From Macrostomum lignano (taxonomy: Eukaryota), in assembly GCA_002269645.1 (NCBI GenBank), contig NIVC01000853.1, positions 1 through 64,000 of the forward strand: a stretch of DNA of 64,000 nt. The letters are read 5' to 3'. Positions 11,733 to 53,802 of the stretch are shown one piece after another (positions within the stretch are counted from its first letter, which is position 1; the number at the start of each line of letters is the position of its first letter). The notes under the pieces were generated by a model. It did no database searches, was not told the origin of the DNA, and saw only the letters and a program-made list of their open reading frames with translations. Position numbers and translations under genes: made by a program.

Positions 11733-11995
11733 TAGCAACCTGTTTAAAGCAACCTGTTTATAGCAACCTGTTTAAAGCAACCTGTTTATAGCAACCTGTT
11801 TATAGCAACCTGTTTATAGCAACCTGTTTATAGCAACCTGTTTATAGCAACCTGTTTATAGCAACCTGTTTATAGCAACCTGTTTATAGCAACCTGTTTA
11901 TAGCAACCTGTTGTTTATCAACCTGTTTTTAGCACCCTGTTGTTTATTAACCTGTTTATAGAAACCTGTTTACTAATATGTTTATAGCAACCTAT
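11733..11995. repeat. 14-bp minisatellite AGCAACCTGTTTAT
   Basis: Tandem copies read directly; the array degenerates at its right end. Confidence 0.95.
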
Positions 11996-12272
11996 TACTT
12001 ACAGCAAGCTTTTTATAACCACCTGTTTATTAACTGTAAATTCAGTAGCTTGAGTGCTATAACGCACTGAAAACTCAGATTTTTATATGACAGACTATAG
12101 AATATTTAGGAATGCCAGTTTTAATTTGTGTTAATAAAGCTAATTACTGAAACTATTGTAATTCGCTTTGAGGCAAAATGAGCACCCCAATGTTATTCTG
12201 ACTGACGATCTTGAACCCATGGTTTGGTGAATGCTGCCGCGTGTCAGTTACATGCGGTCAATAGAGTTATAA

Positions 12273-12301
12273 CTAGCAATCTTCGCCCCCCGTTGGGGGA
12301 C
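12273..12301 (-). terminator. Helitron 3' terminal hairpin plus CTAG (rolling-circle termination signal); repeated at 22103-22131 and 32005-32033
   Basis: 7-bp GC-rich stem with one G-T pair, 3-nt loop, 8-nt spacer, CTAG. Confidence 0.93.
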
Positions 12302-12410
12302 ATCTGGATAGAATCTCTGTTCTCTACAAGTAACAAAAAGACAGCCAAATAAAGCCTTCACAAAGACAACAGACAAACTGCTCAAATAAAGTGTAATGCA
12401 AAAAGAAATC

Positions 12411-12520
12411 ATCCCAAGACAGCAAGCATCCCCCAGATAGCAAGCATCCCCCAAATAGCAAGCATCCCCCAGATAGCAAGCATCCCCCAGATAGCAAGCA
12501 TCCCCAAATAGTAAGCATCC
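12411..12520. repeat. 18-bp minisatellite AGCAAGCATCCCCCAGAT inside the Helitron 3' region (also about 22241-22420 and 32143-32310)
   Basis: Tandem copies; unit number differs between Helitron copies (copy 2 is 71 bp longer than copy 1 here). Confidence 0.93.
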
Positions 12521-12619
12521 ACCAGACAATAAGTAGCTAGTGCCACAATTTCCTTAGCTCTATAGTGGCTCCTTTAAAATTGGCATGACGCTTACTTTTA
12601 CGTTTGAAATTGTGTATCT

Positions 12620-13385
12620 TTTATGTTTGACATGGTGGCTCTTTAATGTTCGACATAGTGGCTCTTTAATGTTAGACATGGTGGCTCTTTAATTTTTGAC
12701 ATGGTGGCTATTTAATGTTTGACATGGAGTCACATATATGTTGGACATGGTGGCTCTTTTATGATTGACATGGTGGCTCTTTAATGTTTGACCTGGTGGC
12801 ACCTCAATGTAATGATGGCTCTTTAATGTTTGAAATGGTGGCTCTTTAATGTTCGACATGGTGGCTCTATAATCTTCGACATGGTGGCTCTTTAATGTTC
12901 GATATGGTGGCTCTTTAATGTTAGACATGGTGGCTCTTTAATGCTCGACATGGTGGTCCTTTTATGCTTCACATGGTGGCTCTTAAATGTTTGACATGTT
13001 GGTCCTTTTATGTTTGACATGGTGGCTCTTTAATGTTTGACATGGTGGCTCTTTTATGTTTGACATAATGGCTCTTTAATGTTCTACATGGTGGCTTTTT
13101 TATTTTTGACATGGTGGCTCTTTTTTAATGTTTGGCATGGTGGCTCTTTAATGTTCGACATGGTGGCTCTTTAATGTTAGACATGGTGGCTCTTTAATTT
13201 TTGACATGGTGGCTCTTTAATGTTCGATATGGTGGTCCTTTTATGCTTGACATTGTGGCTCTTTAATGTTTGACATGTTGGTCCTATTATGTTTGACATG
13301 GTGGCTCTTTAATGTTTGGCATGGTGGCTCTTTAATGTTTGACATGGTGGCTCTTTAATGTTAGACATGGTGGCTCTTTAATTTT
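12620..13385. repeat. 23-bp minisatellite GACATGGTGGCTCTTTAATGTTT inside the Helitron (also about 22525-23285; shorter at about 32410-32818)
   Basis: GACATGG at 13341 and 13364 (period 23); about 30 degenerate units. Confidence 0.93.
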
Positions 13386-14535
13386 TAACGTTTGTTAAAC
13401 GTTTTGTTAAACGTTTTTGACGTTTGTAACGCAAGAATTTTTTGTATTTTTTCGCGAATAAACTTGAAAAGTACAAAGTTAAAACTTATGAACATGGCAT
13501 TAAAAGTACAACCGATATGTCACGTATACATAGCGTGTGCAATGGCTGCATGTGACCAGATGAGTTCCTTTAATACTCTACGTTAGTCTATAGTCGCAGC
13601 CCTCGGATTCGCTCATTCCTGCCCTCAAATCCATAGTCAGAACAATCAGTTCGGCTCTATTTCCTTAGCCTTTGCGCTTTGCCACAGACTATTCATATTT
13701 GTTTCGCCAAAGATTAAGAAATGAAGTAAGACAAAAGCTTCATTCAGGGCCTTCGCCTTAGTTAAAATTGACATCTTGTGAGTTTCGTATATTATTCAAC
13801 TTTCAATATATGGAAGACGAAGGCCCCGTCGCAAGTTGATGCAAATCGTTTTTTATGAGCTTACAGTCCACAGTTGTCACAGGTGACTTGATCGAGATAT
13901 TTTTGATTTTTGAAAAAAAGACTGTCACTCGTAGTTTGCGTAAAAATCCATATACTAAAATTCACTCTAATGTTAAGTTTTTGCGAACCTTGGAAAACTA
14001 AAAACAAAATTGTTTCGTCTTTTGCATAAATTTGCGATATAAAATAAGTAAAGTTTTTACACGAATTATAATGAAATTTCAGGTGAAAAATAAAAGACAA
14101 AATTAACTGCTCATCAAAGATTGAATTCATTAAAAGCAGTGCAAAAGAAGGTTTGTTTCAAAAGTTACTTTCGGCTAATATGAAATTGCCTTAAAATACA
14201 AATTAACTGTAAAGTGCAAATTGACTGTAAAAATTAATACAATGAATAAAATAAGCCTAATTGAGCTTCAACATAAAGTTCATCAGCTATTAGCTCGTAC
14301 TCACTGCCATGCAATATCTACGCTTCGTTAGAAATGAGGTTGGGGCAATAAGTTTCCTGCGATTCTTTTAGGAATGAGAGCTATTGACAGCGATTGCTTT
14401 AGAGAATGAGAGCTATTACTTAAGAGATATAGGGAAATAATTATTCTATTTTTCCTTAAAAATAAATGAATATACTTTCTAGCCTTTTGCATAAGGAAAA
14501 TTATTGCTCACCCCTCATTTTTTACGATAAATAAA

Positions 14536-17500
14536 TTAGTCTTCAGTGAGAACTTCTGGAAACACAACGTTTCTGGTCCTTGTTCCCGGAATCCGGACGC
14601 GAACATTTGCCGCGTTCTTTGCTCGTGACAGCGCCGTGTACAGCTGGCCATGCGTGAAGCAACCGACTGACAGGTCAATGCCAACTGTGTCCAGAGACTG
14701 TCCCTGCGACTTGTGAATCGTCAGGCAGAAACTCGGCTTCACAGGGAACTGCAGCCGCTTAAAACTGACGGGGAGGTCCGCATTGCTAGGAATCAGCGGG
14801 ATTCGCGGCAGAAGAATCTCGTCTCCCGTGAACTGGCCGGCGGCAATCTTGCATCTAAGCACGTTCTCGCCCATTGCGAGTATGATGAGCCGCGTACCAT
14901 TGCACAATCGTGGCGGGTTGATGTTCCTGAGAAGAACTACTGGCATACCCACTTTTAGCCTCAGCAAGTGAATCGGAAAGTTCGGGGCATCCAGCTGGTT
15001 GAGCAACTCAGGCGGGAAGTGCGTAGCGGCATCCTCATCGGCCACACTGTCTATTGAGCGGTACTCCCGCAGGCTGCCGGGGAACATGCCCAGGCACGTC
15101 TCGTTGATGGCATCCACTGAGTCATTGTACGGCGCCAGGATCGCTCGGCTTGCAAAGTAGCCGTCCCTCTCCACTGACGCCTCAAACGATGGGTACACAA
15201 AATTTATCAGATCATTGAGCGGCGCCTCCGCAGAAATGATGATCTCAGCAGGAAGAGACACTTTCTCCTCTGCATCCTGGTCAATTGTTCCGGATCCGAT
15301 CTGGGGGAGTTAAAAGTCAAATATTTAAAACGCTAGACAGACTTTAAGCTAGGCATTCTTGAATAAGCCACAATTTTTAAAATGGAGCTCTCAACACGAA
15401 AGAAACCGAATATCCTTAAATCTTCCAATAAATAAACTGATGAAAACAAACTTACCTGCTTGAGTAGCTCGGTGTATCTCAAATACGTTGCAGAATCGGA
15501 ACTGCTCAGCAATCGGATGTTTCTTGTAAGGCGATGCCGCCGGAAAAATTTCCACAGTGGGGATCTGCTGACACACGCCATGACGCTGTTGGCTCGAGTC
15601 CCATGCACCACAACGGGCAGCAGCTGGCGAAAGTCCCCAGCGCAAACGAAAACCACTCCGCCGAATGGCACGTCCTGCTTCCGCACGTCTCGCAAGCACC
15701 GGTCGACGGCCTCCAAATCCTTCCGGTTTGTCATAGAAATCTCGTCCCAGACAATTAGACGCACTGTCCGAAATACAGCGGCCTGTTTGGACTGCGCTCC
15801 AACAGCGCACACGTCTTTGCTCGAACGGATCGCCCGAATTGGTATCTTGAACCTGGCATAGAAAAATAGTTTCACCATGCCTAACATATTTACAGCACAC
15901 GAAATATTTACAACTGCTTTTTGAAATATTGACAATAAATTACTCACGTTGAATGCGCCGTCTGTCCACCTGGCAAAAGAGTCGCTGCGATTCCAGAAGC
16001 CGCAACGGCGAGGGCGACTTCACCCCGGCTGCGCACGAAGGCTAGCAGAACCTCTAGCAGGAAGGTCTTGCCAGTGCCAGCAGGTGCGTCCAGGAAGTGC
16101 AAGCCGCTGGTGCCGTCCACAAGATTCTGAGTCACGGACTCGTACACCGCTTTCTGCTCATCTGTCAGCATTGGTAAGCGCGCCTCAGTAATCAGTGCTT
16201 GCTCAACCGTATCAAACTGCATTGGTCCATCTTGAGGTGTCACGGAGGCCGCAGGCAGGCCGTACTCTGGCAGGCTTCTCCCGCCCATGGAGATCAGCAT
16301 GCTCTGAAGCTCACGCAGCGCCAGGTCAGTAATCTCCTCGGTGCTCAAGTCTCGGTGGTGGAACCGCAGGTCCTCGCTGAGATCCTCGGCAAAACTGCAC
16401 CAGAGGTCGCTGCCATCCTCAGGCTCACCCCATATGAGAATTACGGCCAGAAGATGTCTCAGGGCTCTTGGCATTCTTGACTGAACGGCCTCAGCTAGAC
16501 ACCGCCGCCAGTGATCATCTCGCTGCAGCAGGCCAAGGGCCATGCAAGCAGCCTTGGCGCTCGGATGCACAACGCCGTCCACGGTCTGCAGCGCCTCGAA
16601 GCTAGTCGGTCCCCTAACATTCAAAAGGAGCATTCGAACATAAAATAAATCACCTGCTCTTGGACTCACCGTGTACATGCGTGCAACGTTTTTGTTCCGC
16701 ACTACACCCGGATGGCCATCGACTCGCACACCCTGCTTGGCCCGCCGCCACTCTCTTTCGCTGGAGTGCCACACAAAGTAGGACGGCACCTCCGTGTAGA
16801 GCAAGGACCCAGCAAATTCGTCAATACGGCACAGCTTGAAAAATGCCGTCAACGTCGAATCCTTCGGCGTTCTCGCTTTTGCTCTTGCGGTCCCCTCGTT
16901 GAAATACACGAGCTGCTCTTCCGACTTGTGAACGCAGAGTCGGATGACCGCCGGAAACCTGTTGTGCACCTGATCAGAAAGTGGAAGGAAAATATACAGC
17001 CTTTAAGTTTCGATGGAAATTCAATTTATACTATGACGAGGTTTCACAGCTCTGGTTAAAATGAGCCAATAATAATTAGAATGCGAATTACTTCAAAGCC
17101 CAAGATGGTATTCACGGCTTCCATTGGACCAATGTAGCGCGCGGACAGGTACTCTTTATTCTCATCACGCGGCTTATTTCCTGTCGTTTGCGTCGGCTGC
17201 TGGTCACCCACTGCCTGCTCTCTCGGTTCAGTAGAATTCCTATTGGCATCGACTTTGAACGTCGCCATGTCGCCACCCTTTAACAGGTACTTGATCACGT
17301 ACTTGACCGACTTCACAGTGGCGCAAACTTCGACGTTCAAGTGGCACGCAAACTGGAGCAACAGGTCAGGGCTGTACGGAACGACCCACCTGTTTTAATG
17401 AAAAAATAATATCATTAACTTTCAGAAACAAAAGCTGCAATGCACAACTAAGCAATATATTAGCGTTTGAACTTCCCTGTTGTCCATGCGAATGCTCCGG

Positions 17501-20500
17501 CCTTTGAACAGTTTGTCCACTGTAAATCCGCCCATCTCAGGCGATAGTCTGCGGTACAGTGGGTAGCCAGTATCGCTGGTCAGCGTCACCTGCTGGAACT
17601 CTTTCGGAAAGCCCTTGCTGCATTCGCCATTCTCCATGCAAGGACACGCCGGATTCTCCTTGCCGCAGGGCCATGGATCATGTGCGTCTTCACCAGCTCA
17701 TACAGCACAGGCTGCTGCTCTGGGTCCGGAATCTCGGCAGACACGATGTCATCGTATCGGTCCGGAGTCACTCGCTGACCGCTCATGAGCCACAGCAGAA
17801 AGTGCACATGGGGAAGACCTGGAGCGTCAAAAAAGTATTAAAAAATATCACAAAACCTTTGTAAATCTAAATTTTAATAAATCTTAAAACTTTGATTCTT
17901 GCAAGTCAGAATTTTTACTCACCACGCTTCTGGTACTCCAGTGAGCAAACGTGAGCGGCCTCTTTCCCATAGCGCTTGGTCAACTGGGCCAGAAGAGCTT
18001 TCCTCTTCATTTCAAAGACTCGGCTAACAATGTCCGGCCGGTCTTCTGCCCGCTGTCCAGGCAGCAGCTGAGCGCTGATCTCCGGCCATTTCGGATTGCA
18101 CGTTGCGGTGACAAACAGGTCCGGCTTACCGAACTTGTGAACATAGGTCATAGCGTCCTGTAGCCTCTCCATCAGGTACCTTGGCCCGCCAACGAAGCTC
18201 GAAGACAGAAGCACATGCGCGGGCTTGCCTATGTCACTCGGATCTCTGTCGGTAGACCTGCCATCAGCTGCAAACAGAGCGTCCCGCAGACCGCTGTATG
18301 TCTCGCTGCGCAGGTCCTGCTGATGGGTCCGCAAATACAGCAGCCTCTCTGCCTCAATCTTGGCACACATGTCCACCAAGTACTGCTGAAATAATCTTCG
18401 GCCATAGTGCAGCACACTGAACTGGCCCGCTCGCACCATGATTTCGCTCGCATAGTATTTCATGGGCGTTAATTTCTTGCCATTACTCATCAGCAACTCC
18501 GGGTGCCAGCCATCTTCGCCATTCGGGAACAGCAGCACATACTCCAGCGGGTCATATGAGCGGTGCGTCTCGCTGATTCTCTGGGAACCGCCACCACGCA
18601 GTTGAATCACGACGTCCCGACTGGCCGGTGTGTTCTCATTGTCCTCCACAATCAGGATACCGACCTCGTTCGCCGTAGGCAAGTTGTAGCGCCTGATTTT
18701 GAACGGAGTTTGTGGGATACAGAGTCTGTACAAATTGGATAATTGGATAATTTATTACGCAAAATATCTTATTAGAATGTCTTGCAGACATACCGAATGT
18801 GTTCCCCAGATGGTCGACGGTCAGGGTGAATTACGATTCGCGCATCTCCCAACTCCGGATCTTGACTGATTCGATGAGCGACTGCCCTCAGGCTGCGGAC
18901 ATAGCCGTTGCACTCGTGAAGCAGCGTCTGCAATAGCTCCAGTAGCTCCGGCTTCACCTTCTGGCTGAGACTCTGGCGGCTTTCAAGTTCGCGATCATTG
19001 AAATACACCTGCCAGCCATGGGGCTCAGCTGAATCCTCTGCAAACAGCGGCGCCGTGTTGTGATGCAACTGGCCGCTGATGATGAAGCTGGGACACCAGC
19101 CTGGCACCAACCGCAGTTTGGCACCCAGCGATGTCAGGTGCAGCGCCGAGTTGTAACTCCGAATGTTGGTCAGGAACTCGGCACTCATTCTGTGCCGCCC
19201 CAGGTACAGATCTGCCAGCACTTGAGGCACGGTGCGGCTGGGCAGCTTCACCTTGCCTTTGGCGCAGCAGAAATTCCTCGTCTCAGAGCACCAAAGTAAT
19301 GCACCGCATTGGTCGCATGCTCTGTCCATTGGGCCACAGTTATGGGCTGGCGCTTCAGGCCTGATAATCCGTTCTGGCCTGTGATTAGAAGGATTAGGAT
19401 TAGGAAGGATTAATGGCAAACAGTTTTCCCAGTTAATCTTTCAGCTTACAAAAAAATTTATTGGAATAAAACAACTTGAGTTCGATGACAAATAAATTAT
19501 GATGACCAGTCACACCAATGACCTACCTCTCTTGAGCAGGTCTTGCGCCAAAATGACATGCACTCTGCTGAGTTAATCTTGGCTCCTCTGCATCTACAAT
19601 GGGCTCAGAAACTGGAATCGGATTAGCAAATCGCAATGACTCATAATGCTCATGACGCAAAAGAATTCGGACGATTGCAATCGGTGGCTGCAAAGGGGAC
19701 ATACAGTACTGCAGTACAGTGCCGTTTTCTTGATAAATCACCAGATCAACATTAAAACAACGGCTTAAAAGCGGAACAACTTCATCAGGCACATATGTGC
19801 CTTCAGAAAAAGAGGAATCAACAATGAAATCAGCATTTTCTGGCAAAACAAAGCCTTGTTCAATCAATTCTGGCATAATCTGCACTACACGGCTCGTCAG
19901 CTCGTGTCTTAAAGATGCCGCATCGGTCTCAAGTGGAGTGCCCTGCAACTGATCACAGACTGCATAAAAAAAACAGTTCCCATCACCAGGAATGCGAATT
20001 ATGCGCAACGCATCAAAAGGTACCACAGACGGTGTGGCCAACTCACTACTATCAAACCTGGAATATAGGAAAAAAATTATACACAACTTCATTTGCCGGT
20101 AATTAAAGTAGTGACGAATAAATTTTATGCTATTCTATACTGATCTCTTAAATAAAACTCTTGGAAAGCAATCGACTTGAAAAGATGAGAAAAATGCACG
20201 AAACAGATTCCAGTTTTTAATTATATGCCCAAGTACCAATAAAACATCAGCTAAGATAGAAAATACCCCGAATTAGGCACAAAGGGCACTTGGATTTTAT
20301 ATAGCTATAAAATATATAGCTCCAATTAAAATGTCATCCTACCTGCCAGCCGACACTCCTCGACGGCGAATTTGCTCGGCTTCCACTCGAGCTCTTCGTT
20401 GCTCTTCGGTTTCTGAAGCGCGTCGCTTCTCCGCACGAGTTCTGTCTCCAGATCTACGCTCTTCTCGCTGAGCGTCTGTTTCCGTTGCCCTTCGCTCAGC

Positions 20501-20821
20501 ATTTTCCTGCCGGAGTCTCGTCAGGCGCTCTTCTCGCTGAGCGTCGGTTTCAGTTGCCCTTCGCTCAGCCTCCTGCTGCCGGTGTCCAGCCAGCCGCTCT
20601 TCTCGCTGCGCGTCAGTCTCCATGGCCGTTCGCTCAGCCTTCTGCTGCCGCAGTCCAGCCAACCGCTCTTCTCGCTGCGCGTCAGTCTCCATGGCCGTTC
20701 GCTCATTCTTCTGCTGCCGCAGTCCAGCCAGCCGCTCCTCTCGCTCAACGGCACTCTCTTGCTGACGCTTCTTCTTGGCATCTCTGCTCTTCTTCAATGC
20801 GCTGGTGCCACGTCGAGCCAT
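14536..20821 (-). CDS. Helitron RepHel transposase, copy 1 (9 exons; STPR-like repeats, OTU, Zn finger, Rep, Pif1); 1-bp deletion in exon 5
   Basis: Exons 20343-20821, 19527-20057, 18794-19378, 17923-18692, 17477-17818, 17092-17389, 15948-16969, 15456-15852, 14536-15300; phases are consistent except for the exon 5 deletion. Motifs: GDGNC..HYESL (OTU), CDQC..CC (ZnF), PDLFVTATCNP, EYQKRGLPHVH (HUH), YVIKY, APAGTGKT, WDEISM, GDFRQL, HKSQGQSL, HGQLYTALSR. Confidence 0.9.
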
Positions 20822-22102
20822 ATTGGAATTCAAATTGAAAGATAAGAATTTTGAGTTATAATGAAAAGAAAGGATAGTAGGGGTTGTGTGCGAGAAAAGA
20901 GAAAGGTATGAAGTCTATAATGTCACGCGTTTTAAACTCAGCAACCACCCAATCCCAAAAAGCTGGACACCATTTGTACACTGTTAGACTGTCAGTGTGT
21001 ACAGCAAGCCTAAATTCTCTCCAATACCCGCCTGCTAATTGGTCAGGACTCTTTTTATTATTCAATACTCTCTCTCAAACACCTAACTCTAACTCTCCTA
21101 TGTGAAAGGATTCAGATAAATTTTCTGAAGGAGGCGCAAGCCTCAGTAGCCAATGTACATCTATCTCTGTGGCACTTTTGGACTTTTTTATAATCAGACG
21201 GTTTTATTACATTTTGGAGGGTCAGTCTCAAACATGGTTCGTATATTGTGAATCAATTAGATACTGTATATATGTGCATGTATTTCACTCTCTCACTCTC
21301 CCTCTCTCCAGCATTTAAAGTTAGTATGTCAATTGTGCACGGGAAGATTTTATAATGTACAATCTTTTCTCGCAGTGTACATTTATAGTTCTCTAGCCTG
21401 GCGACAAAAAATACTACTTTACTGGGCGCTGCAAAGTTTAATTCCAATCAGAATGGCTCACAGTAGGAAGTTCTGCTTGACCCTTGCAGAAAGGCATGTG
21501 TGTTATTCGAATATTCGCGCTTCTTCTATGCTTTACAGGAACTTTTCATGCTTAAAATGACACTTCTTTTACGATTTTTATGACACTTGTGGTTCTGAAT
21601 TAGTAAGCCTCGACGCTAGCATTTTTTAGGTTTTTCATGACGCTTCTTTTATGTTTAACAAAAATTACACTATAAGATGAGCACGAAGCAGTTATGACAT
21701 AATCAATTTTTCAATCGGTCAGTATGGTTACGCAGTCTAAATCAAGTCTCGTAATATGCTTCTACACAGTGTTTTCAACACTGTGACGCAATTCAAGGCG
21801 GAGGTACAATTCAGCTGTTATGCAATCTTTATCACAATCAGAATTCAGTCAGTCAGTTTTTTCTCTAGCATTTTTACAATGCATTTCAGGTCGAAAGAGC
21901 TGCTTGACCTTTGCAAAAAAGCATGTTTTTCGAATATTTAATCCCTTTAAAATTGAGCAATTTCTTAGCCAAGATGCATGTACCGTCCCAGGAAAATTTC
22001 TGATCGAATGGTGCAAGTTTGAAGAAAATCGGTTGAGCCATTTTTTCTGAAATCTATCGCATACCTACCCACATACAGACAACTCATTTTTAGTATATAG
22101 GA

Positions 22103-31100: not shown

Positions 31101-32004
31101 CGGTTTTATTACATTTTGGAGGGTCAGTCTCAAACATGGTTCGTATATTGTGAATCAATTAGATACTGTATATATGTGCATGTATTTCACTCTCTCACTC
31201 TCCCTCTCTCCAGCATTTAAAGTTAGTATGTCAATTGTGCACGGGAAGATTTTATAATGTACAATCTTTTCTCGCAGTGTACATTTATAGTTCTCTAGCC
31301 TGGCGACAAAAAATACTACTTTACTGGGCGCTGCAAAGTTTAATTCCAATCAGAATGGCTCACAGTAGGAAGTTCTGCTTGACCCTTGCAGAAAGGCATG
31401 TGTGTTATTCGAATATTCGCGCTTCTTCTATGCTTTACAGGAACTTTTCATGCTTAAAATGACACTTCTTTTACGATTTTTATGACACTTGTGGTTCTGA
31501 ATTAGTAAGCCTCGACGCTAGCATTTTTTAGGTTTTTCATGACGCTTCTTTTATGTTTAACAAAAATTACACTATAAGATGAGCACGAAGCAGTTATGAC
31601 ATAATCAATTTTTCAATCGGTCAGTATGGTTACGCAGTCTAAATCAAGTCTCGTAATATGCTTCTACACAGTGTTTTCAACACTGTGACGCAATTCAAGG
31701 CGGAGGTACAATTCAGCTGTTATGCAATCTTTATCACAATCAGAATTCAGTCAGTCAGTTTTTTCTCTAGCATTTTTACAATGCATTTCAGGTCGAAAGA
31801 GCTGCTTGACCTTTGCAAAAAAGCATGTTTTTCGAATATTTAATCCCTTTAAAATTGAGCAATTTCTTAGCCAAGATGCATGTACCGTCCCAGGAAAATT
31901 TCTGATCGAATGGTGCAAGTTTGAAGAAAATCGGTTGAGCCATTTTTTCTGAAATCTATCGCATACCTACCCACATACAGACAACTCATTTTTAGTATAT
32001 AGGA
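22103..32004 (-). mobile_element. Helitron copy 2 (9902 bp), nearly identical to copy 1
   Basis: Same 5' TC (32004) and 3' hairpin-CTAG (22103); joined to neighbours with no intervening base. Confidence 0.97.
24437..30723 (-). CDS. Helitron RepHel transposase, copy 2 (9 exons, about 1729 aa; frame intact if the GG donor of intron 5 is used)
   Basis: Exon lengths 479+531+585+770+343+298+1022+397+765 = 5190 nt, taken from copy 1 with exon 5 measured here (27377-27719, 343 nt, reading IHGPCGKENPACPC); the ORF translations match copy 1. Confidence 0.9.
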
Positions 32005-35000
32005 CTAGCAATCTTCGCCCCCCGTTGGGGGACATCTGTATAGAATCTCTGTTCTCTACAAGTAACAAAAAGACAGCCAAACAAAGCCTTCACAAAGACA
32101 ACAGACAAACTGCTCAAATAAAGTGTAATGCAAAAAGAAATCATCCCAAGACAGCAAGCATCCCCCAGATAGCAAGCATCCCCTAGATTGCAAGCATCCC
32201 CCAGATAGCAAGCATCCCCTAGATTGCAAGCATCCCCCAGATAGCAAGCATCCCCCAAATAGCAAGCATCCCCCAGATAGCAAGCATCCCCAAATAGTAA
32301 GCATCCACCAGACAATAAGTAGCTAGTGCAACAATTTCCTTAGCTCTATAGTGGCTCCTTTAAAATTGGCATGACGCTTACTTTTACGTTTGAAATTGTG
32401 TATCTTTTATGTTTGACATGGTGGCTCTTTTATGTTTGACATGGTGGCTCTTTTATGTTTGACCTGGTGGCACCTCAATGTAATGATGGCTCTTTAATGT
32501 TTGACCTGGTGGCACCTCAATGTAATGATGGCTCTTTAATGTTTGAAATGGTGGCTCTTTAATGTTCGACATTGTGGCTCTATAATCTTCGACATGGTGG
32601 CTCTTTAATGTTCGACATGGTGGCTCTTTAATGTTAGACATGGTGGCTCTTTAATGTTCGACATGGTGGTCCTTTTATGCTTGACATTGTGGCTCTTTAA
32701 TGTTTGACATGTTGGTCCTTTTATGTTTGACATGGTGGCTCTTTAATGTTTGGCATGGTGGCTCTTTGATGTTTGACATGGTGGCTCTTTAATGTTAGAC
32801 ATGGTGGCTCTTTAATTTTTAACGTTTGTTAAACGTTTTTGACGTTTGTAACGCAAGAATTTTTTGTATTTTTCGCGAATAAACTTGAAAAGTACAAAGT
32901 GAAACTTATGAACATGGCATTAAAAGTACAACCGATATGTCTCGTATACATAGCGTGTGCAATGGCTGCATGTGACCAGATGAGTTCCTTTAATACTCTA
33001 CGTTAGTCTATAGTCGCAGCCCTCGGATTCGCTCATTCCTGCCCTCAAATCCATAGTCAGAACAATCAGTTCGGCTCTATTTCCTTAGCCTTTGCGCTTT
33101 GCCACAGACTATTCATATTTGTTTCGCCAAAGATTAAGAAATGAAGTAAGACAAAAGCTTCATTCAGGGCCTTCGCCTTAGTTAAAATTGACATCTTGTG
33201 AGTTTCGTATATTATTCAACTTTCAATATATGGAAGACGAAGGCCCCGTCGCAAGTTGATGCAAATCGTTTTTTATGAGCTTACAGTCCACAGTTGTTAC
33301 AGGTGACTTGAGATATTTTTGATTTTTGAAAAAAGACTGTCACTCGTAGTTTGCGTAAAAATCCATATACTAAAATTCACTCTAATGTTAAGTTTTTGCG
33401 AACCTTGGAAAACTAAAAACAAAATTGTTTCGTCTTTTGCATAAATTTGCGATATAAAATAAGTAAAGTTTTTACACGAATTATAATGAAATTTCAGGTG
33501 AAAAATAAAAGACAAAATTAACTGCTCATCAAAGATTGAATTCATTAAAAGCAGTGCAAAAGAAGGTTTGTTTCAAAAGTTACTTTCGGCTAATATGAAA
33601 TTGCCTTAAAATACAAATTAACTGTAAAGTGCAAATTGACTGTAAAAATTAATACAATGAATAAAATAAGCCTAATTGAGCTTCAACATAAAGTTCATCA
33701 GCTATTAGCTCGTACTCACTGCCATTGCAATATCTACGCTTCGTTAGAAATGAGGCTGGGGCAATAAGTTTCCTGCGATTCTTTTAGGAATGAGAGCTAT
33801 TGACAGCTATTGCTTTAGAGAATGAGAGCTATTACTTAAGAGATATGGGGAAATAATTATTCTATTTTCCTTAAAAATAAATGAATATACTTTCTAGCCT
33901 TTTGCATAAGGAAAATTATTGCTCACCCCTCATTTTTTACGATAAATAAATTAGTCTTCAGTGAGAACTTCTGGAAACACAACATTTCTGGTCCTTGTTC
34001 CCGGAATCCGGACGCGAACATTTGCCGCGTTCTTTGCTCGTGACAGCGCCGTGTACAGCTGGCCATGCGTGAAGCAACCGACTGACAGGTCAATGCCAAC
34101 TGTGTCCAGAGACTGTCCCTGCGACTTGTGAATCGTCAGGCAGAAACTCGGCTTCACAGGGAACTGCAGCCGCTTAAAACTGACGGGGAGGTCCGCATTG
34201 CTAGGAATCAGCGGTATTCGCGGCAGAAGAATCTCGTCTTCCGTGAACTGGCCGGCGGCAATCTTGCATCTAAGCACGTTCTCGCCCATTGCGAGTATGA
34301 TCAGCCGCGTACCATTGCACAATCGTGGCGGGTTGATGTTTCTGAGAAGAACTACTGGCATACCCACTTTTAGCCTCAGCAAGTGAATCGGAAAGTTCGG
34401 GGCATCCAGCTGGTTGAGCAACTCAGGCGGGAAGTGCGTAGCGGCATCCTCATCGGCCACACTGTCTATTGAGCGGTACTCCCGCAGGCTGCCGGGGAAC
34501 ATGCCCAGGCACGTCTCGTTGATGGCATCCACTGAGTCATTGTACGGCGCCAGGATCGCTCGGCTTGCAAAGTAGCCGTCCCTCTCCACTGACGCCTCAA
34601 ACGATGGGTACACAAAATTTATCAGATCATTGAGCGGCGCCTCCGCAGAAATGATGATCTCAGCAGGAAGAGACACTTTCTCCTCTGCATCCTGCTCAAT
34701 TGTTCCGGATCCGATCTGGGGGAGTTAAAAGTCAAATATTTAAAACGCTAGACAGACTTTAAGCAAGGCATTCTTGAATGAGCCACAATTTTTTTAATGG
34801 AGCTCTCAACACGAAAGAAACCGAATATCCTTAAATCTTCCAATATTTAAACTGATGAAAACAAACTTACCTGCTTGAGTAGCTCGGTGTATCTCAAATA
34901 CGTTGCAGAATCGGAACTGCTCAGCAATCGGATGTTTCTTGTAAGGCGATGCCGCCGGAAAAATTTCCACAGTGGGGATCTGCTGACACACGCCATGACG

Positions 35001-38000
35001 CTGTTGGCTCGAGTCCCATGCACCACAACGGGCAGCAGCTGGCGAAAGTCCCCAGCGCAAACGAAAACCACTCCGCCGAATGGCACGTCCTGCTTCCGCA
35101 CGTCTCGCAAGCACCGGTCAACGGCCTCCAAATCCTTCCGGTTTGTCATAGAAATCTCGTCCCAGACAATTAGACGCACTGTCCGAAATACAGCGGCCTG
35201 TTTGGACTGCGCTCCAACAGCGCACACGTCTTTGCTCGAACGGATCGCCCGAATTGGTATCTTGAACCTGGCATAGACAAATAGTTTCACCATGCCGAAC
35301 ATATTTACAGCACACGAAATATTTACAACTGCTTTTTGAAATATTGACAATAAATTACTCACGTTGAATGCGCCGTCTGTCCACCTGGCAAAAGAGTCGC
35401 TGCGATTCCAGAAGCCGCAACGGCGAGGGCGACTTCACCCCGGCTGCGCACGAAGGCTAGCAGAACCTCTAGCAGGAAGGTCTTGCCAGTGCCAGCAGGT
35501 GCGTCCAGGAAGTGCAAGCCGCTGGTGCCGTCCACAAGATTCTGAGTCACGGACTCGTACACCGCTTTCTGCTCATCTGTCAGCATTGGTAAGCGCGCCT
35601 CAGTAATCAGTGCTTGCTCAACCGTATCAAACTGCATTGGTCCATCTTGAGGTGTCACGGAGGCCGCAGGCAGGCCGTACTCTGGCAGGCTTCTCCCGCC
35701 CATGGAGATCAGCATGCTCTGAAGCTCACGCAGCGCCAGGTCAGTAATCTCCTCGGTGCTCAAGTCTCGGTGGTGAAACCGCAGGTCCTCGCTGAGATCC
35801 TCGGCAAAACTGCACCAGAGGTCGCTGCCATCCTCAGGCTCACCCCATATGAGAATTACGGCCAGAAGATGTCTCAGGGCTCTTGGCATTCTTGACTGAA
35901 CGGCCTCAGCTAGACACCGCCGCCAGTGATCATCTCGCTGCAGCAGGCCAAGGGCCATGCAAGCAGCCTTGGCGCTCGGATGCACAACGCCGTCCACGGT
36001 CTGCAGCGCCTCGAAGCTAGTCGGTCCCCTAACATTCAAAAGGAGCATTCGAACATAAAATAAATCACCTGCTCTTGGACTCACCGTGTACATGCGTGCA
36101 ACGTTTTTGTTCCGCACTACACCCGGATGGCCATCGACTCGCACACCCTGCTTGGCCCGCCGCCACACTCTTTCGCTGGAGTGCCACACAAAGTAGGACG
36201 GCACCTCCGTGTAGAGCAAGGACCCAGCAAATTCGTCAGTACGGCACAGCTTGAAAAATGCCGTCAACGTCGAATCCTTCGGCGTTCTCGCTTTTGCTCT
36301 TGCGGTCCCCTCGTTGAAATACACGAGCTGCTCTTCCGACTTGTGAACGCAGAGTCGGATGACCGCCGGAAACCTGTTGTGCACCTGATCAGAAAGGGAA
36401 AGGAAAATATACAGCCTTTAAGTTTCGATGGAAATTCAATTTATACTATGACGAGGTTTCACAGCTCCGGTTAAAATGAGCCAATAATAATTAAAACGCG
36501 AATTACTTCAAAGCCCAAGATGGTATTCACGGCTTCCATTGGACCAATGTAGCGCGCGGACAGGTACTCCTTAATCTCATCACGCGGCTCATTTCGTGTC
36601 GTTTGCGTCGACCGCTGGTTACCCACTGCCTGCTCTCTCGGTTCAGTAGAATTCCTATTGGCATCGACTTTGAACGTCGCCATGTCGCCACCCTTTAACA
36701 GGTACTTGATCACGTACTTGACCGACTTCACAGTGGCGCAAACTTCGACGTTCAAGTGGCACGCAAACTGGAGCAACAGGTCAGGGCTGTACGGAACGAC
36801 CCACCTGTTTTAATGAAAAAATAATATCATTAACTTTCAGAAACAAAAGCTGCAATGCACAACTAAGCAATATATTAGCGTTTGAACTTCCCTGTTGTCC
36901 ATGCGAATGCTCCGGCCTTTGAACAGTTTGTCCACTGTAAATCCGCCCATCTCAGGCGATAGTCTGCGGTACAGTGGGTAGCCAGTATCGCTGGTCAGCG
37001 TCACCTGCTGGAACTCTTTCGGAAAGCCCTTGCTGCATTCGCCATTCTCCATGCAAGGACACGCCGGATTTTCCTTGCCGCAGGGGCCATGGATCATGTG
37101 CGTCTTCACCAGCTCATACAGCACAGGCTGCTGCTCTGGGTCCGGAATCTCGGCAGACACGATGTCATCGTATCGGTCCGGAGTCACTCGCTGACCGCTC
37201 ACGAGCCACAGCAGAAAGTGCACATGAGGAAGACCTGGAGCGTCAAAAAAGTATTAAAAAATATCACAAAACCTTTGTAAATCTAAATTTCAATAAATCT
37301 TAAAACTTTGATTCTTGCAAGTCAGAATTTTTACTCACCACGCTTCTGGTACTCCAGTGAGCAAACGTGAGCGGCCTCTTTCCCATAGCGCTTGGTCAAC
37401 TGGGCCAGCAGAGCTTTCTTCTTCATTTCAAAGACTCGGCTAACAATGTCGGGCCGGTCTTCTGCCCGCTGTCCAGGCAGAAGCTGAGCGCTGATCTCCG
37501 GCCATTTCGGATTGCACGTTGCGGTGACAAACAGGTCCGGCTTACCGAACTTGTGAACATAGGTCATAGCGTCCTGTAGCCTCTCCATCAGGTACCTTGG
37601 CCCGCCAACGAAGCTCGAAGACAGAAGCACATGCGCGGGCTTGCCTATGTCACTCGGATCTCTGTCGGTAGACCTGCCATCAGCTGCAAACAGAGCGTCC
37701 CGCAGACCGCTGTACGTCTCGCTGCGCAGGTCCTGCTGATGGGTCCGCAAATACAGCAGCCTCTCTGCCTCAATCTTGGCACACATGTCCACCAAGTACT
37801 GCTGAAATAATCTTCGGCCATAGTGCAGCACACTGAACTGGCCCGCTCGCACCATGATTTCGCTCGCATAGTATTTCATGGGCGTCAATTTCTTGCCATT
37901 ACTCATCAGCAACTCCGGGTGCCAGCCATCTTCGCCATTCGGGAACAGCAGCACATACTCCAGCGGGTCATATGAGCGGTGCGTCTCGCTGATTCTCTGG

Positions 38001-41000
38001 GAACCGCCACCACGCAGTTGAATCACGACGTCCCGACTGGCCGGTGTGTTCTCATTGTCCTCCACAATCAGGATACCGACCTCGTTCGCCGTAGGCAAGT
38101 TGTAGCGCCTGATTTTGAACGGAGTTTGTGGGATACAGAGTCTGTACAAATTGGATAATTGGATAATTTATTACGCAAAATATCTTATTAGAATGTCTTG
38201 CAGACATACCGAATGTGTTCCCCAGATGGTCGACGGTCAGGGTGAATTACGATTCGCGCATCTCCCAACTCCGGATCTTGACTGATTCGATGAGCGACTG
38301 CCCTCAGGCTGCGGACATAGCCGTTGCACTCGTGAAGCAGCGTCTGCAAAAGCTCCAGTAGCTCCGGCTTCACCTTCTGGCTGAGACTCTGGCGGCTTTC
38401 AAGTTCGCGATCATTGAAATACACCTGCCAGCCATGGGGCTCAGCTGAATCCTCTGCAAACAGCGGCGCCGTGTTGTGATGCAACTGGCCGCTGATGATG
38501 AAGCTGGGACACCAGCCTGGCACCAACCGCAGTTTGGCACCCAGCGATGTCAGGTGCAGCGCCGAGTTGTAACTCCGAATGTTGGTCAGGAACTCGGCAC
38601 TCATTCTGTGCCGCCCCAGGTACAGATCTGCCAGCACTTGAGGCACGGTGCGGCTGGGCAGCTTCACCTTGCCTTTGGCGCAGCAGAAATTCCTCGTCTC
38701 AGAGCACCAAAGTAATGCACCGCATTGGTCGCATGCTCTGTCCATTGGGCCACAGTTATGGGCTGGCGCTTCAGGCCTGATAATCCGTTCTGGCCTGTGA
38801 TTGGAAGGATTAGGATTAGGAAGGATTAATGGCAAACAGTTTTCCCAGTTAATCTTTCAGCTTACAAAAAAATTTATTGGAATAAAACAACTTGAGTTCG
38901 ATGACAAATAAATTATGATGACCAGTCACACCAATGACCTACCTCTCTTGAGCAGGTCTTGCGCCACAATGACCTGCACTCTGCTGAGTTAATCTTGGCT
39001 CCTCTGCATCTACAATGGGCTCAGAAACTGGAATCGGATTAGCAAATCGCAATGACTCATAATGCTCATGACGCAAAAGAATTCGGACGATTGCAATCGG
39101 TGGCTGCAAAGGGGACATACAGTACTGCAGTACAGTGCCGTTTTCTTGATAAATCACCAGATCAACATTAAAACAACGGCTTAAAAGCGGAACAACTTCA
39201 TCAGGCACATATGTGCCTTCAGAAAAAGAGGAATCAACAATGAAATCAGCATTTTCTGGCAAAACAAAGCCTTGTTCAATCAATTCTGGCATAATCTGCA
39301 CTACACGGCTCGTCAGCTCGTGTCTTAAAGATGCCGCATCGGTCTCAAGTGGAGTGCCCTGCAACTGGTCACAGACTGCATAAAAAAAACAGTTCCCATC
39401 ACCAGGAATGCGAATTATGCGCAACGCATCAAAAGGTACCACAGACGGTGTGGCCAACTCACTACTATCAAACCTGGAATATAGGAAAAAAATTATACAC
39501 AACTTCATTTGCCGGTAATTAAAGTAGTGACGAATAAATTTTATGCTATTCTATACTGATCTCTTAAATAAAACTCTTGGAAAGCAATCGACTTGAAAAG
39601 TTGAGAAAAAATGCACGAAACAGATTCCAGTTTTTAATTATATGCCCAAGTACCAATAAAACATCAGCTAAGATAGAAAATACCCCGAATTAGGCACAAT
39701 GGGCACTTGGATTTTATATAGCTATAAAATATATAGCTCCAATTAAAATGTCATCCTACCTGCCAGCCGACACTCCTCGACGGCGAATTTGCTCGGCTTC
39801 CACTCGAGCTCTTCGTTGCTCTTCGGTTTCTGAAGCGCGTCGCTTCTCCGCACGAGTTCTGTCTCCAGATTTACGCTCTTCTCGCTGAGCGTCGGTTTCC
39901 GTTGCCCTTCGCTCAGCCTCCTGCTGCCGGTGTCCAGCCAGCCGCTCTTCTCGCTGCGCGTCAGTCTCCATGGCCGTTCGCTCATTCTTCTGCTGCCGCA
40001 GTCCAGCCAGCCGCTCCTCTCGCTGAACGGCACTCTGTTGCTGACGCTTCTTCTTGGCATCTCTGCTCTTCTTCAATGCGCTGGTGCCACGTCGAGCCAT
40101 ATTGGAATTCAAATTGAAAGATAAGAATTTTGAGTTATAATGAAAAGAAAGGATAGTAGGGGTTGTGTGCGAGAAAAGAGAAAGGTATGAAGTCTATAAT
40201 GTCACGCGTTTTAAACTCAGCAACAACCCAATCCCAAAAAGCTGGACACCATTTGTACACTGTTAGACTGTCAGTGTGTACAGCAAGCCTAAATTCTCTC
40301 CAATACCCGCCTGCTAATTGGTCAGGACTTTTTTATTATTCAATACTCTCTCTCAAACACCTAACTCTAACTCTCCTATGTGAAAGGATTCAGATAAATT
40401 TTCTGAACTGGAGGCGCAAGCCTCAGTAGCCAATGTACATCTATCTCTGTGGCACTTTTGGACTTTTTTATAATCAGACGGTTTTATTACATTTTGGAGG
40501 GTCAGTCTCAACATGGTTCGTATATTGTGAATCAATTAGATACTGTATATATGTGCATGTATTTCACTCTCTCACTATCCCTCTCTCCAGCATTTAAAGT
40601 TAGTATGTCAATTGTGCACGGGGACATTTTATAATGTACAATCTTTTCTCGCAGTCTACATTTATAGTTCTCTAGCCTGGCGACAAAAAATACTACTTTA
40701 CTGGGCGCTGCAAAGTTCAATTCCAATAAGAATGGCTCACAGTAGGAAGTTCTGCTTGACCCTTGCAGAAAGTGTTTTCAACACTGTGACGCAATTCAAG
40801 GCGGAGATACAATTCAGCTGTTATGCAATCTTTATCACAATCAGAATTCAGTCAGTCAGTTTTTTCTCTAGCATTTTTACAATGCATTTCAGGTCGAAAG
40901 AGCTGCTTGACCTTTGCAAAAAAGCATGTTTTTCGAATATTTAATACCTTTAACATTGAGCAATTTCTTAGCCAAGATGCATGTACCGTCCCAGGAAAAT

Positions 41001-41097
41001 TTCTGATCGAATGGTGCAAGTTTGAAGAAAATCGATTGAGCCAATTTTTCTGAAATCTATCGCATACCCACAGACAACTCATTTTTAGTATATAGGA
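32005..41097 (-). mobile_element. Helitron copy 3 (9093 bp), a diverged variant and the 5'-most unit of the array
   Basis: 5' TC at 41097 is preceded by a host A (41098); scattered SNPs, a shorter 23-bp array, two fewer 69-bp coding repeats, and a deletion of about 275 bp near the 5' end. Confidence 0.96.
33951..40100 (-). CDS. Helitron RepHel transposase, copy 3 (9 exons; 46 aa shorter in exon 1)
   Basis: Same exon set and motifs; substitutions include FTG>FTE in the helicase and DEN>DEI in exon 6. Confidence 0.88.
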
Positions 41098-41230
41098 TAT
41101 GGTAACAACATGCCTAAACTATGCAGAAAATTATACGGCTTTTTAGTGAAGGATTGGGAAAATGTTTATGTATATAACAACTACTCGTAATGATGCAGAA
41201 GCAGATTAAAGGAATGATAAGCTATGACAC

Positions 41231-53577: not shown

Positions 53578-53802
53578 CCGCCTCGGCTCTTAAACAATTA
53601 TTTTTCTCCCACGCCTCCGCCTCGATAATCCTAACTTAGGAGACAGCTGGGGTAGTCTGAAATCTGCGTGTTGAAATCTGAATTTAAACACGTCTCTTGT
53701 ACGCTCGCAGGAGCAGCTGGGACAGTAGCGATTGAGGCTTCTTCATCAAACTGTGAAGAAACCTGAGTAGCGAAATTGGGCTGCATTTCACGGCTAGCAA
53801 CA

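What the first reader, a model, noticed from the sequence alone, without database searches (positions are those of the whole stretch)
12273..41097. Three complete Helitrons fused head-to-tail with base-exact CTAG|TC junctions in one A^T site
Seen: on the minus strand both internal junctions (32005/32004 and 22103/22102) read ...GATTGCTAG|TCCTATATAC with no base gained or lost. The outer ends are host A|TC (41098/41097) and CTAG|T (12273/12272), with no TSD. Known: Helitrons insert between A and T, and their circular intermediates join the 3' CTAG directly to the 5' TC. The 5' end also resembles, from memory, the Helraiser left end TCCTATATAATAAAA. Inference: this 28.8-kb array of full-length coding elements may be a genomic record of rolling-circle concatemer formation or self-targeted insertion.
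Basis: partly seen in the sequence, partly recalled or inferred. Interest (0 to 1): 0.85.

Follow-up and report, generated by a model that had tools for sequence, protein, structure and literature searches.

The report
Head-to-tail chain of three Helitrons
Three full-length rolling-circle transposons (Helitrons) of the flatworm Macrostomum lignano sit end to end with base-exact joints, but they come from two sub-lineages, and such chains, already known for Helitrons, are common in this family, which points to repeated insertion at existing Helitron ends rather than one concatemer.

Summary
On the minus strand three Helitrons lie in one A^T site with no target-site duplication: A (41097-32005, 9093 bp), B (32004-22103, 9902 bp) and C (22102-12273, 9830 bp). 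Both internal junctions read GATTGCTAG|TCCTATATAC.

Each copy carries a 9-exon RepHel gene that aligns colinearly with Helraiser (E 1e-226). The gene is intact in A and B. C has a 1-nt homopolymer frameshift that could be a sequencing error.

The array is not a homogeneous concatemer.
- A shares its structural indels with a copy at another M. lignano locus (L011) and is closer to it (0.57%) than to B or C (0.72-0.77%).
- B and C belong to a very young subfamily. Dispersed copies differ from them by 0.04-0.10%, against 0.03% between B and C.
- A and B diverged under purifying selection (pN/pS 0.33), so they descend from separate active lineages.

In ten other M. lignano loci I found ten more exact CTAG|TC junctions in six loci, nearly all between unlike elements.

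The best reading is serial integration at resident Helitron termini. The origin of the B|C junction is unresolved. This is a new instance of a known kind and of moderate interest.

The parts
32005..41097 (-). Helitron copy A (9093 bp), the 5'-most copy. It belongs to the short structural subfamily: relative to B/C it lacks 8 nt, 276 nt, two 69-nt units and several minisatellite units.
   Evidence: Aligns in one 9146-nt HSP (98.5%) with the autonomous copy of M. lignano locus L011. Closer to L011 (0.57%) than to B/C.
22103..32004 (-). Helitron copy B (9902 bp), the middle copy, a member of the very young subfamily.
   Evidence: 99.9% identical to C and to dispersed copies in L009, L012, L013 and L014. 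Has a private 71-nt expansion of the 18-bp minisatellite.
12273..22102 (-). Helitron copy C (9830 bp), the 3'-most copy, of the same young subfamily. It has 4 private changes.
   Evidence: Private changes at B positions 1909 (deletion), 4434 (deletion), 7673 (C>T) and 9868 (A>C).
32004..32005 (-). A|B junction: the 3' CTAG of A joined directly to the 5' TC of B. It joins two different subfamilies.
22102..22103 (-). B|C junction: the 3' CTAG of B joined directly to the 5' TC of C, both of the same subfamily.
41098..41098 (-). Host A flanking the 5' TC of the array.
12272..12272 (-). Host T flanking the 3' CTAG of the array.
33951..40100 (-). RepHel gene of copy A: 9 exons, conceptual 1683 aa, open frame.
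24437..30723 (-). RepHel gene of copy B: 9 exons at 30723-30245, 29958-29428, 29279-28695, 28593-27824, 27719-27377, 27289-26992, 26869-25848, 25753-25357 and 25201-24437. Conceptual 1729 aa with STPR repeats, a weak OTU match, a Rep domain (HUH = HVH; Tyr pair in YVIKY) and a Pif1-type helicase.
   Evidence: Colinear with Helraiser 7LCC at E 1e-226. Identical splice pattern in annotated M. lignano proteins.
14536..20821 (-). RepHel gene of copy C. The frame is broken by a 1-nt deletion in a C-run of exon 5 (about 17678).
12286..12299 (-). 3' subterminal hairpin CCCCC-AAC-GGGGG(G), 13 nt from the CTAG end of C. The same hairpin is at 22116-22129 in B and 32018-32031 in A.
   Evidence: The stem is kept while the loop varies (AAC, ATC, AAG) across family members.
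12595..13386 (-). 23-bp minisatellite in the 3' non-coding part of C. Also at 22496-23287 in B and 32381-32820 in A, where it is shorter.
22243..22427 (-). 18-bp minisatellite just upstream of the 3' end of B. Also at 32145-32312 in A. It is shorter in C.
30359..30647 (-). 69-nt coding repeat (STPR repeats, exon 1) of B. Also at 20457-20745 in C. A has two fewer units, in frame.

Best explanation
The 28.8-kb block is a heterogeneous head-to-tail chain of three autonomous canonical Helitrons of Macrostomum lignano. It was built by at least two separate integration events at one original A^T site, not by one rolling-circle trimer.

Shown:
- The A|B joint connects members of two distinct subfamilies.
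- In this family exact CTAG|TC joints between unlike elements are frequent.

Inferred mechanism: the RepHel transposase binds and nicks a resident element at its own terminus, either at the host-N|TC boundary of the left end or at an existing CTAG|TC joint. These are its natural cleavage substrates. It uses that nick as the target for an incoming copy. The incoming 3' CTAG-OH is joined to the 5' T of the resident element. This is the same joining reaction that closes Helitron circles, but between two molecules. Repeating it builds chains.

Unresolved: the order of arrival of A, B and C. Also unresolved is how the B|C joint arose, since it links two near-identical copies. It could come from a third such insertion, from integration of a dimer, or from local unequal exchange.
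For: (1) Exact joints, and outer flanks A and T with no TSD.

(2) Canonical Helitron features: TC...CTAG termini, a subterminal GC hairpin, and a RepHel protein colinear with Helraiser that has the HUH motif, a Tyr pair and a Walker A motif.

(3) The copies are not a star. 105 differences separate A from B and C together, spread over the whole length, against about 8 between B and C.

(4) A shares the 8-nt, 276-nt and two 69-nt indels with the L011 copy and aligns with it in a single 9146-nt HSP. Over the core, A-L011 is 0.57% and A-B/C is 0.72-0.77%.

(5) A versus B: exons 0.65% against introns and non-coding 1.3-1.5% (Fisher p = 2.7e-4). There are 16 synonymous and 17 non-synonymous differences, pN/pS 0.33 (binomial p = 0.0018). 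The divergence therefore accrued in lineages selected for a working transposase, not in place.

(6) B and C are no closer to each other (0.03%) than to dispersed copies (0.04-0.10%).

(7) Family survey of 10 M. lignano loci from assembly GCA_002269645.1. There are 10 exact CTAG|TC joints in 6 loci. One of them lacks a C in the downstream 5' end. Among them:
- A|[NA 4337][autonomous 9829][NA 2358]|T in L013 (NA = non-autonomous element);
- an unrelated Helitron 3' end abutting a family 5' end in L011.

(8) Neighbouring non-autonomous units differ from each other by 6-13%, while the adjacent autonomous copies are 99.7-99.9% alike. The pairs were therefore not co-transposed as fixed composites.

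(9) Published biochemistry. Helraiser cleaves its own left end at the flank|TC boundary. It makes circles with a precise CTAG-TC joint, and those circles serve as donors, so the joint itself is a substrate (PMC4778049; PMC5876387).
Against: - B and C share one haplotype at all four informative sites among the six young copies sampled. They may be true sisters made in one step, as a dimer or by local duplication.
- One sampled locus (L009) has a 99.67% identical tandem pair that includes a 30-nt spacer, so local duplication also operates in this family.
- The survey is small and biased. Loci were chosen through annotated RepHel proteins, each locus extends at most 10 kb beyond the annotated gene on either side, and several arrays run off their contigs.
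- End-targeting is inferred from arrangement only. No intermediate alleles, empty sites or experimental insertions were seen.
- Relative insertion ages could not be established.
- The copy number in this window could not be checked against reads.
Confidence: 0.65

Rival explanations
1. Mixed origin. B and C entered together as a dimer, or C was copied into B in one step. The dimer could come from two rounds of rolling-circle synthesis on a circular intermediate, or from read-through of an internal CTAG|TC joint of a donor array. A arrived in a separate event.
For: B-C divergence is 0.03%. B and C share a unique haplotype at B positions 4946, 5338, 7712 and 9447 among six young copies. Circles with the same joint are real intermediates and active donors. 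Rolling-circle tandem arrays of like units are reported in plants (citing Xiong et al. 2016).
Against: Dispersed copies of the same subfamily are almost as close to B or C (0.04-0.10%), so near-identity is not diagnostic. In the other sampled loci, none of the exact joints links two near-identical full units. The one near-identical tandem pair seen (L009) includes a 30-nt spacer.
Confidence: 0.2
2. Local duplication. The site first held a dimer [A][C]. Unequal sister-chromatid or homologous exchange, or replication slippage, then added B.
For: Tandem repeats are prone to unequal exchange. L009 shows a 3621-bp unit duplicated together with its spacer at 99.67% identity. Unlike the other young copies, B shares with A a longer 18-bp minisatellite and the state at B position 4449. 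Both B and C share A's state at 5338.
Against: Exchange between A and C would make the middle copy a C-5'/A-3' chimera. B matches C against A along its whole length, including a site 75 nt from the 3' end. The only later A=B site is a private change in C. A crossover would have to fall within the last roughly 75 bp of about 9.9 kb.
Confidence: 0.08
3. A single rolling-circle trimer. All three units were made from one element and integrated at once, and the present differences arose afterwards.
For: Exact joints and a single A^T site. Concatemer formation is the classical explanation for tandem Helitrons.
Against: Pairwise divergence is about 20-fold unequal. A shares large indels with a copy at another locus. 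A and B differ under purifying selection, which in-place decay would not produce. Rescuing this model needs full-length gene conversion of B by C, plus convergent indels in A and L011.
Confidence: 0.03
4. Assembly artefact. The real locus has one or two copies and the assembler inflated a long repeat.
For: Units of 9-10 kb at 99.9% identity are hard to assemble. Some B/C differences are homopolymer indels typical of long-read errors.
Against: A differs from B/C by about 2% and by several large indels. B and C differ by true substitutions and by a 71-nt repeat expansion. An independent M. lignano assembly holds many analogous exact joints.
Confidence: 0.04

Closest known systems
Helraiser / Helibat1 (canonical Helitron1 of vespertilionid bats; structure 7LCC)
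   Same: 5' TC and 3' CTAG termini, a subterminal 3' hairpin, A^T insertion without TSD. The RepHel protein is colinear over about 1190 residues (E 1e-226), with GLPHxH, the SVKY..KY tyrosine pair and a Walker A motif. Its circles carry the same CTAG-TC joint.
   Different: The flatworm element has an N-terminal extension with STPR repeats and a weak OTU protease match, eight short introns (one with a GG donor), and long internal 23-bp and 18-bp minisatellites. It appears naturally intact and very young, whereas Helraiser is a reconstruction.
[quoted passage not shown] 2008, PMC2267711)
   Same: An exact CTAG|TC (G/T) joint between two different Helitrons. [quoted passage not shown] This is the same logic as here.
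   Different: Two non-autonomous elements carrying gene fragments, at one locus. Here there are three autonomous copies, and the arrangement recurs across the family.
Tandem Helitron arrays attributed to rolling-circle amplification (Myotis, Pritham & Feschotte 2007; plant centromeric Helitrons, Xiong et al. 2016)
   Same: [quoted passage not shown]
   Different: Those arrays are described as repeats of like, mostly short or truncated, non-autonomous units. The arrays here are mostly mixtures of unlike elements.
Three Helitron copies in tandem in Metarhizium acridum (Chellapan et al. 2016, PMC5148889)
   Same: Three copies in tandem. [quoted passage not shown]
   Different: A fungal Helitron2-like family with different termini. 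No lineage analysis of the units was reported in the passage read.
IS91-family bacterial rolling-circle insertion sequences
   Same: A HUH/Y2 transposase, no TSD, circular intermediates and one-ended transposition. That IS91 also forms tandem multimers rests on my recall of the IS91 literature, not on a text read here.
   Different: Prokaryotic, no fused helicase, different end sequences.

Membership tests
Canonical Helitron (Helitron1) | 5' terminus TC and 3' terminus CTRR | tested here: met
   TCCTATATAC... and ...GATTGCTAG in all three copies and in the family copies sampled from 10 other loci. One of those 5' ends lacks a C.
Canonical Helitron (Helitron1) | Short GC-rich hairpin about 10-15 nt upstream of the 3' end | tested here: met
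   CCCCC-AAC-GGGGG(G) ends 13 nt from the terminus. The folding energy of the 50-nt end is not unusual on its own (z = -0.5). However, the stem is conserved across family members while the loop varies.
Canonical Helitron (Helitron1) | Insertion between host A and T, with no target-site duplication and no terminal inverted repeats | tested here: met
   Outer flanks of the array are A and T with no duplication. Across the family the 3' flank is T in 5 of 5 cases. The 5' flank is A in 4, T in 3 and G in 1, so the 5' rule is relaxed. No empty site was available.
Canonical Helitron (Helitron1) | RepHel protein: HUH nuclease with two catalytic tyrosines, fused to an SF1B Pif1-like helicase | tested here: met
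   Pfam Helitron_like_N 1e-50, PIF1 3e-61, Pif1_2B. Alignment to Helraiser shows HVH, YVIKY and GTGKT.
Canonical Helitron (Helitron1) | Not a Helentron: no apurinic-endonuclease domain | tested here: met
   No endonuclease family among the Pfam hits to the full conceptual protein. Subterminal inverted repeats were not examined systematically.
Rolling-circle concatemer (one element copied several times in one event) | Units identical at birth, so pairwise divergences should be about equal and all units should belong to one lineage | tested here: not met
   ((B,C),A) with about 20-fold unequal divergence. A groups with L011 and shares its indels. The B-C pair alone is compatible.
Rolling-circle concatemer (one element copied several times in one event) | Exact 3'-CTAG to 5'-TC joints between units | tested here: met
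Serial end-targeted insertion (chain building) | Joints that link elements of different lineages or types, recurring at many loci | tested here: met
   The A|B joint. Ten further joints in six of ten M. lignano loci, mostly between non-autonomous and autonomous elements that differ in divergence.
Serial end-targeted insertion (chain building) | Intermediate states (alleles with fewer units) and de novo insertions landing at resident ends | not testable with these tools
   No reads, population data or searchable eukaryotic genome collection. A search with the flanking homeobox-like ORF found no homologue to lead to the allelic or paralogous locus.
Tandem duplication by unequal exchange | The middle unit is a chimera of the outer units | tested here: not met
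   B follows C against A along its whole length.

The most novel reading that the evidence does not exclude
This M. lignano Helitron family is currently or very recently active, with dispersed intact 9.8-kb copies that are 99.9% identical. Its transposase preferentially integrates at the termini or CTAG|TC joints of resident Helitrons. This would be a homing behaviour that builds mixed head-to-tail chains. It would be the intermolecular counterpart of circle closure, and it would offer a natural, intact animal Helitron for testing rolling-circle strand transfer in a flatworm in which transgenic promoter constructs have been used (PMC12801592).
Probability: 0.45. Interest if true: 0.6.

Novelty: new member of a known kind. 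Interest (0 to 1): 0.4.

Why it matters
Head-to-tail Helitrons have long been cited as indirect support for rolling-circle transposition. Whether they are concatemers or adjacent insertions has rarely been resolved with lineage data. Here the units can be placed on a family tree, and the tree favours adjacent insertion. If the family-wide pattern holds genome-wide, it suggests that Helitron ends are themselves preferred integration targets. That would explain how Helitron clusters, composite elements with several termini, and eventually Helitron-derived satellites arise. The family also looks like a naturally intact, very young autonomous animal Helitron in a laboratory species, and such elements are scarce. 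If the pattern does not hold, this is simply one more tandem Helitron locus.

Tried and rejected
(1) Unequal-crossover chimera test. A three-way alignment looked for a switch from C-like to A-like sequence in B. None was found.

(2) I first read the GG donor of intron 5 (GACAACAG|GGAAGT) as an inactivating defect shared by the three copies. I rejected this for three reasons. Every M. lignano copy sampled has it. The annotated M. lignano proteins read RMDNRWVVPY across it. The spliced product aligns without a break to Helraiser.

(3) Fixed [non-autonomous][autonomous] composites spreading as units. Rejected, because the non-autonomous neighbours differ by 6-13% while the autonomous partners are 99.7-99.9% alike.

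(4) Finding the empty or allelic site. The flanking homeobox-like ORF has no database homologue. The window flanks match none of the fetched loci. No searchable eukaryotic genome collection is available.

(5) Checking the recalled Helraiser left-end sequence. It is not present in the held papers.

(6) Folding statistics for the 3' hairpin are not significant on a 50-nt window. Support comes instead from its position and its conservation.

(7) The Yang & Bennetzen 2009 maize Helitron survey could not be read because it is not held.

(8) Other Helitron pieces in the window. blastn of copy B against the rest of the window found nothing.
Full report
OBSERVATION

Reading the minus strand at the four stated positions confirms the finding exactly.
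- The host sequence ...GTTGTTACCATA is followed by TCCTATATACTAAAAATGAG at 41098/41097.
- ...CCCCCAACGGGGGGCGAAGATTGCTAG is joined directly to TCCTATATACTAAAAATGAG at 32005/32004, and again at 22103/22102.
- The last CTAG is followed by the host sequence TTATAACTC at 12273/12272.
- The host flanks are not duplicated. The reconstructed empty site on the + strand is GAGTTATAA|TATGGTAAC.

The three units, named in 5'-to-3' order on the minus strand, are A (41097-32005, 9093 bp), B (32004-22103, 9902 bp) and C (22102-12273, 9830 bp).

WHAT THE UNITS ARE

Open reading frames on the minus strand match Helitron_like_N, PIF1, Pif1_2B and STPR repeats, plus a weak OTU match. They are separated by gaps of 40-290 nt that have GT...AG boundaries.

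Joining them gives a 9-exon gene. It encodes 1729 aa in B and 1683 aa in A, where two in-frame 69-nt repeat units are missing (coordinates). Three results validate the spliced model.
- The Pfam models for Helitron_like_N and PIF1 are covered almost end to end across exon joints.
- The product aligns colinearly with the solved Helraiser transposase over about 1190 residues at E 1e-226. The alignment includes GLPHVH (the HUH motif), SVKYVIKY (the tyrosine pair) and GTGKT (Walker A).
- Annotated M. lignano proteins show the same splice pattern.

C has a 1-nt deletion in a run of C's in exon 5 that breaks the frame. This could be a real mutation or a homopolymer sequencing error.

Each unit ends with a GC hairpin, CCCCC-AAC-GGGGG(G), 13 nt before the CTAG. 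Each carries 23-bp and 18-bp minisatellites in its 3' non-coding part. All defining features of a canonical Helitron are met.

HOST

The closest proteins are from the flatworm Macrostomum lignano. One 52-member cluster is 96% identical at the protein level. Copies in the M. lignano assembly GCA_002269645.1 are 99.9% identical in DNA to B and C. The window is therefore M. lignano or something extremely close to it.

RELATIONSHIPS AMONG THE THREE UNITS

A three-way alignment shows 105 differences that separate A from B and C together. They are spread over the whole length and include indels of 8, 276, 69, 69, 279 and 73 nt. Only about eight differences separate B from C. The copies therefore form ((B,C),A) and not a star.

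B is not a C/A chimera, which argues against simple unequal exchange in an [A][C] dimer.

Between A and B, exons differ by 0.65% and introns and non-coding DNA by 1.3-1.5% (Fisher p = 2.7e-4). Sixteen of 33 coding differences are synonymous, giving pN/pS 0.33 (binomial p = 0.0018). Copies decaying side by side would not show this. The signal means that the A lineage and the B/C lineage diverged while they were being selected for a working transposase, that is, as separate active lineages.

PLACING THE UNITS IN THE FAMILY

I fetched ten M. lignano loci that carry annotated proteins of the cluster.

Over a 6.8-kb core, B and C differ by 0.03%. They differ from dispersed copies in L009, L012, L013 and L014 by only 0.04-0.10%. 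The near-identity of B and C is therefore a property of a very young subfamily and is not proof of local duplication.

A is closer to the copy in L011 (0.57%) than to B or C (0.72-0.77%). It aligns with that copy in one 9146-nt block that shares all the large indels. A therefore belongs to a distinct, shorter structural subfamily that also exists elsewhere in the genome.

At the four informative sites among the six young copies, B and C share the same haplotype. They may be each other's nearest relatives, but the sample is small.

THE SAME JOINT ELSEWHERE

Scanning the ten loci for family ends gave ten further exact CTAG|TC joints in six loci.
- L008 has two.
- L011 has two. In one of them an unrelated Helitron 3' end, ...GGCTAAATGGCTAG, abuts a family 5' end.
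- L013 has two. Its structure is host A|[non-autonomous 4337 bp][young autonomous 9829 bp][non-autonomous 2358 bp]|T.
- L014 has one.
- L015 has two, one of them lacking a C in the downstream 5' end.
- L016 has one.
- L009 has two 3.6-kb non-autonomous units and an autonomous copy, separated by a constant 30-nt spacer. The two non-autonomous units are 99.67% identical.
- L010, L012 and L017 hold single copies.

The non-autonomous neighbours consist of the 287-nt 5' end, long 23-bp minisatellites and the 3' end. They differ from one another by 6-13%, while the autonomous copies next to them are 99.7-99.9% alike. The pairs were therefore not carried around as fixed composites. Young autonomous copies have repeatedly come to lie exactly against the ends of unlike elements, once between two of them.

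For arrays and single copies, the 3' flank is T in 5 of 5 cases. The 5' flank is A in 4, T in 3 and G in 1.

MECHANISM

Shown:
- the array is heterogeneous;
- at least the A|B joint links two lineages;
- such joints are recurrent in the family.

Established for Helraiser:
- the transposase cuts single-stranded DNA precisely at the flank|TC boundary of the left end and at the right end;
- it produces circles in which the 3' CTAG is joined to the 5' TC;
- these circles are active donors, so the joint itself is a substrate (PMC4778049; PMC5876387).

Inferred: a resident left-end boundary, or an existing joint, is a high-affinity nicking site. It therefore serves as an integration target for another copy. 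The incoming CTAG-3'OH is joined to the resident 5' T, which is the intermolecular version of circle closure. Repetition builds chains.

I cannot tell the order of arrival. I also cannot tell whether B|C arose by a third such event, by integration of a dimer, or by local exchange.

COMPARISON WITH WHAT IS KNOWN

None of this is new in kind.
- Du et al. described an exact CTAG|TC joint between two different maize Helitrons. [quoted passage not shown]
- Chellapan et al. list tandem insertions in Myotis, Drosophila, rice and maize. They also describe three copies in tandem in Metarhizium, with the same two explanations (PMC5148889).
- Full-text search found no paper that describes M. lignano Helitrons.

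What this window and its relatives add is threefold. It is an animal case with three full-length autonomous copies. It provides lineage evidence that favours adjacent insertion. It hints that chain formation is the usual state of this family.

VERDICT

This is a new member of a known kind. Interest is moderate (0.4). It would be higher if a genome-wide census and a targeting assay confirmed homing to Helitron ends.

LIMITS

- No reads were available to verify the copy number.
- No empty site was found.
- The survey of loci is small and biased.
- Insertion ages are unresolved.

Noticed in passing
window 27290-27376 (B), 36805-36891 (A), 17390-17476 (C), minus strand; also L008-L017: Intron 5 of the RepHel gene has a non-canonical GG donor (GACAACAG|GGAAGT...AAAACAG|G) in every M. 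lignano copy sampled. A related element from unidentified Logan runs (L001-L007, about 75% DNA identity) has GTGAGT at the same position. Annotated M. lignano proteins and the Helraiser alignment both read straight across it, so it seems to be spliced. It is a conserved GG-AG intron inside a transposase gene.
   Followed up: partly
window 46429-51063: An LTR retrotransposon with two 359-bp LTRs that are 100% identical (46429-46787 and 50705-51063) and one open 1316-aa gag-protease-RT-RNaseH-integrase frame (46757-50707). It sits inside a 15-bp minisatellite (45756-46420 and 51076-51325). It looks very recent.
   Followed up: partly
window 59182-60051 (+): A 289-aa ORF with a DDE_Tnp_4 domain (E 1e-33), of the PIF/Harbinger transposase type.
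   Followed up: partly
window 42922-43356 (+): A 144-aa ORF with a KN/TALE-type homeodomain match (E 1.6e-8), 1.8 kb from the array. It has no homologue at E <= 1e-5 in the large protein collection. It may be a host gene, a single exon or a pseudogene.
   Followed up: partly
window 2486-3205, 11723-12030, 41231-42415, 43662-44881, 45756-46420, 53795-54733, 55098-57207, 61218-62054, 62321-63087: The window outside the array is unusually rich in long minisatellites with periods of 14-43 bp. The Helitron array lies between a 14-bp array and a 39-bp array. The Helitrons themselves carry 18-, 23- and 69-bp arrays.
   Followed up: no
window ~17678 (copy C, exon 5) and ~20195 (copy C, intron 1): The private 1-nt deletions of C are in homopolymer runs (GGCCCCTG to GGCCCTG, and a T run). 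The frameshift in C may therefore be a sequencing error, and C may be intact as well.
   Followed up: partly
B positions 4449, 5338 and 9599-9669 (window about 27556, 26667 and 22336-22406): B shares a base at position 4449 and a longer 18-bp minisatellite with its neighbour A, unlike the other young copies. B and C both share A's base at 5338. Possible explanations are short gene-conversion tracts between neighbouring units, ancestral polymorphism, or independent repeat expansion.
   Followed up: no
L009 3576-3605 and 7197-7226; L015 about 2517-2534: A stub, TCTAAATATACTAAATCT(CTAAGGTTTGTA), lies between a CTAG 3' end and the next 5' end in L009, and again upstream of a 5' end in L015. It resembles a Helitron 5' end. 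It may be the remnant of a left end into which another element inserted a few bases inside the boundary.
   Followed up: no
L013 4460-20983: A very young autonomous copy lies exactly between two older-looking non-autonomous elements within one A...T site. It looks as if it inserted into a pre-existing CTAG|TC joint.
   Followed up: partly
window about 7374 (minus strand) and 6728-7045 / 7379-7708: A Helitron-like 5' motif, TCCAATATACTAAAAC, lies next to a 320-bp inverted repeat (86.6% identity). There is no other similarity to the array. It could be chance or a different Helitron family.
   Followed up: no
L010 10001-29430: The public annotation of one M. lignano locus has a 1169-aa gene model stretched over 19.4 kb, although the family copy there starts only at 23456. 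The model probably stitches unrelated upstream sequence to the Helitron gene.
   Followed up: no
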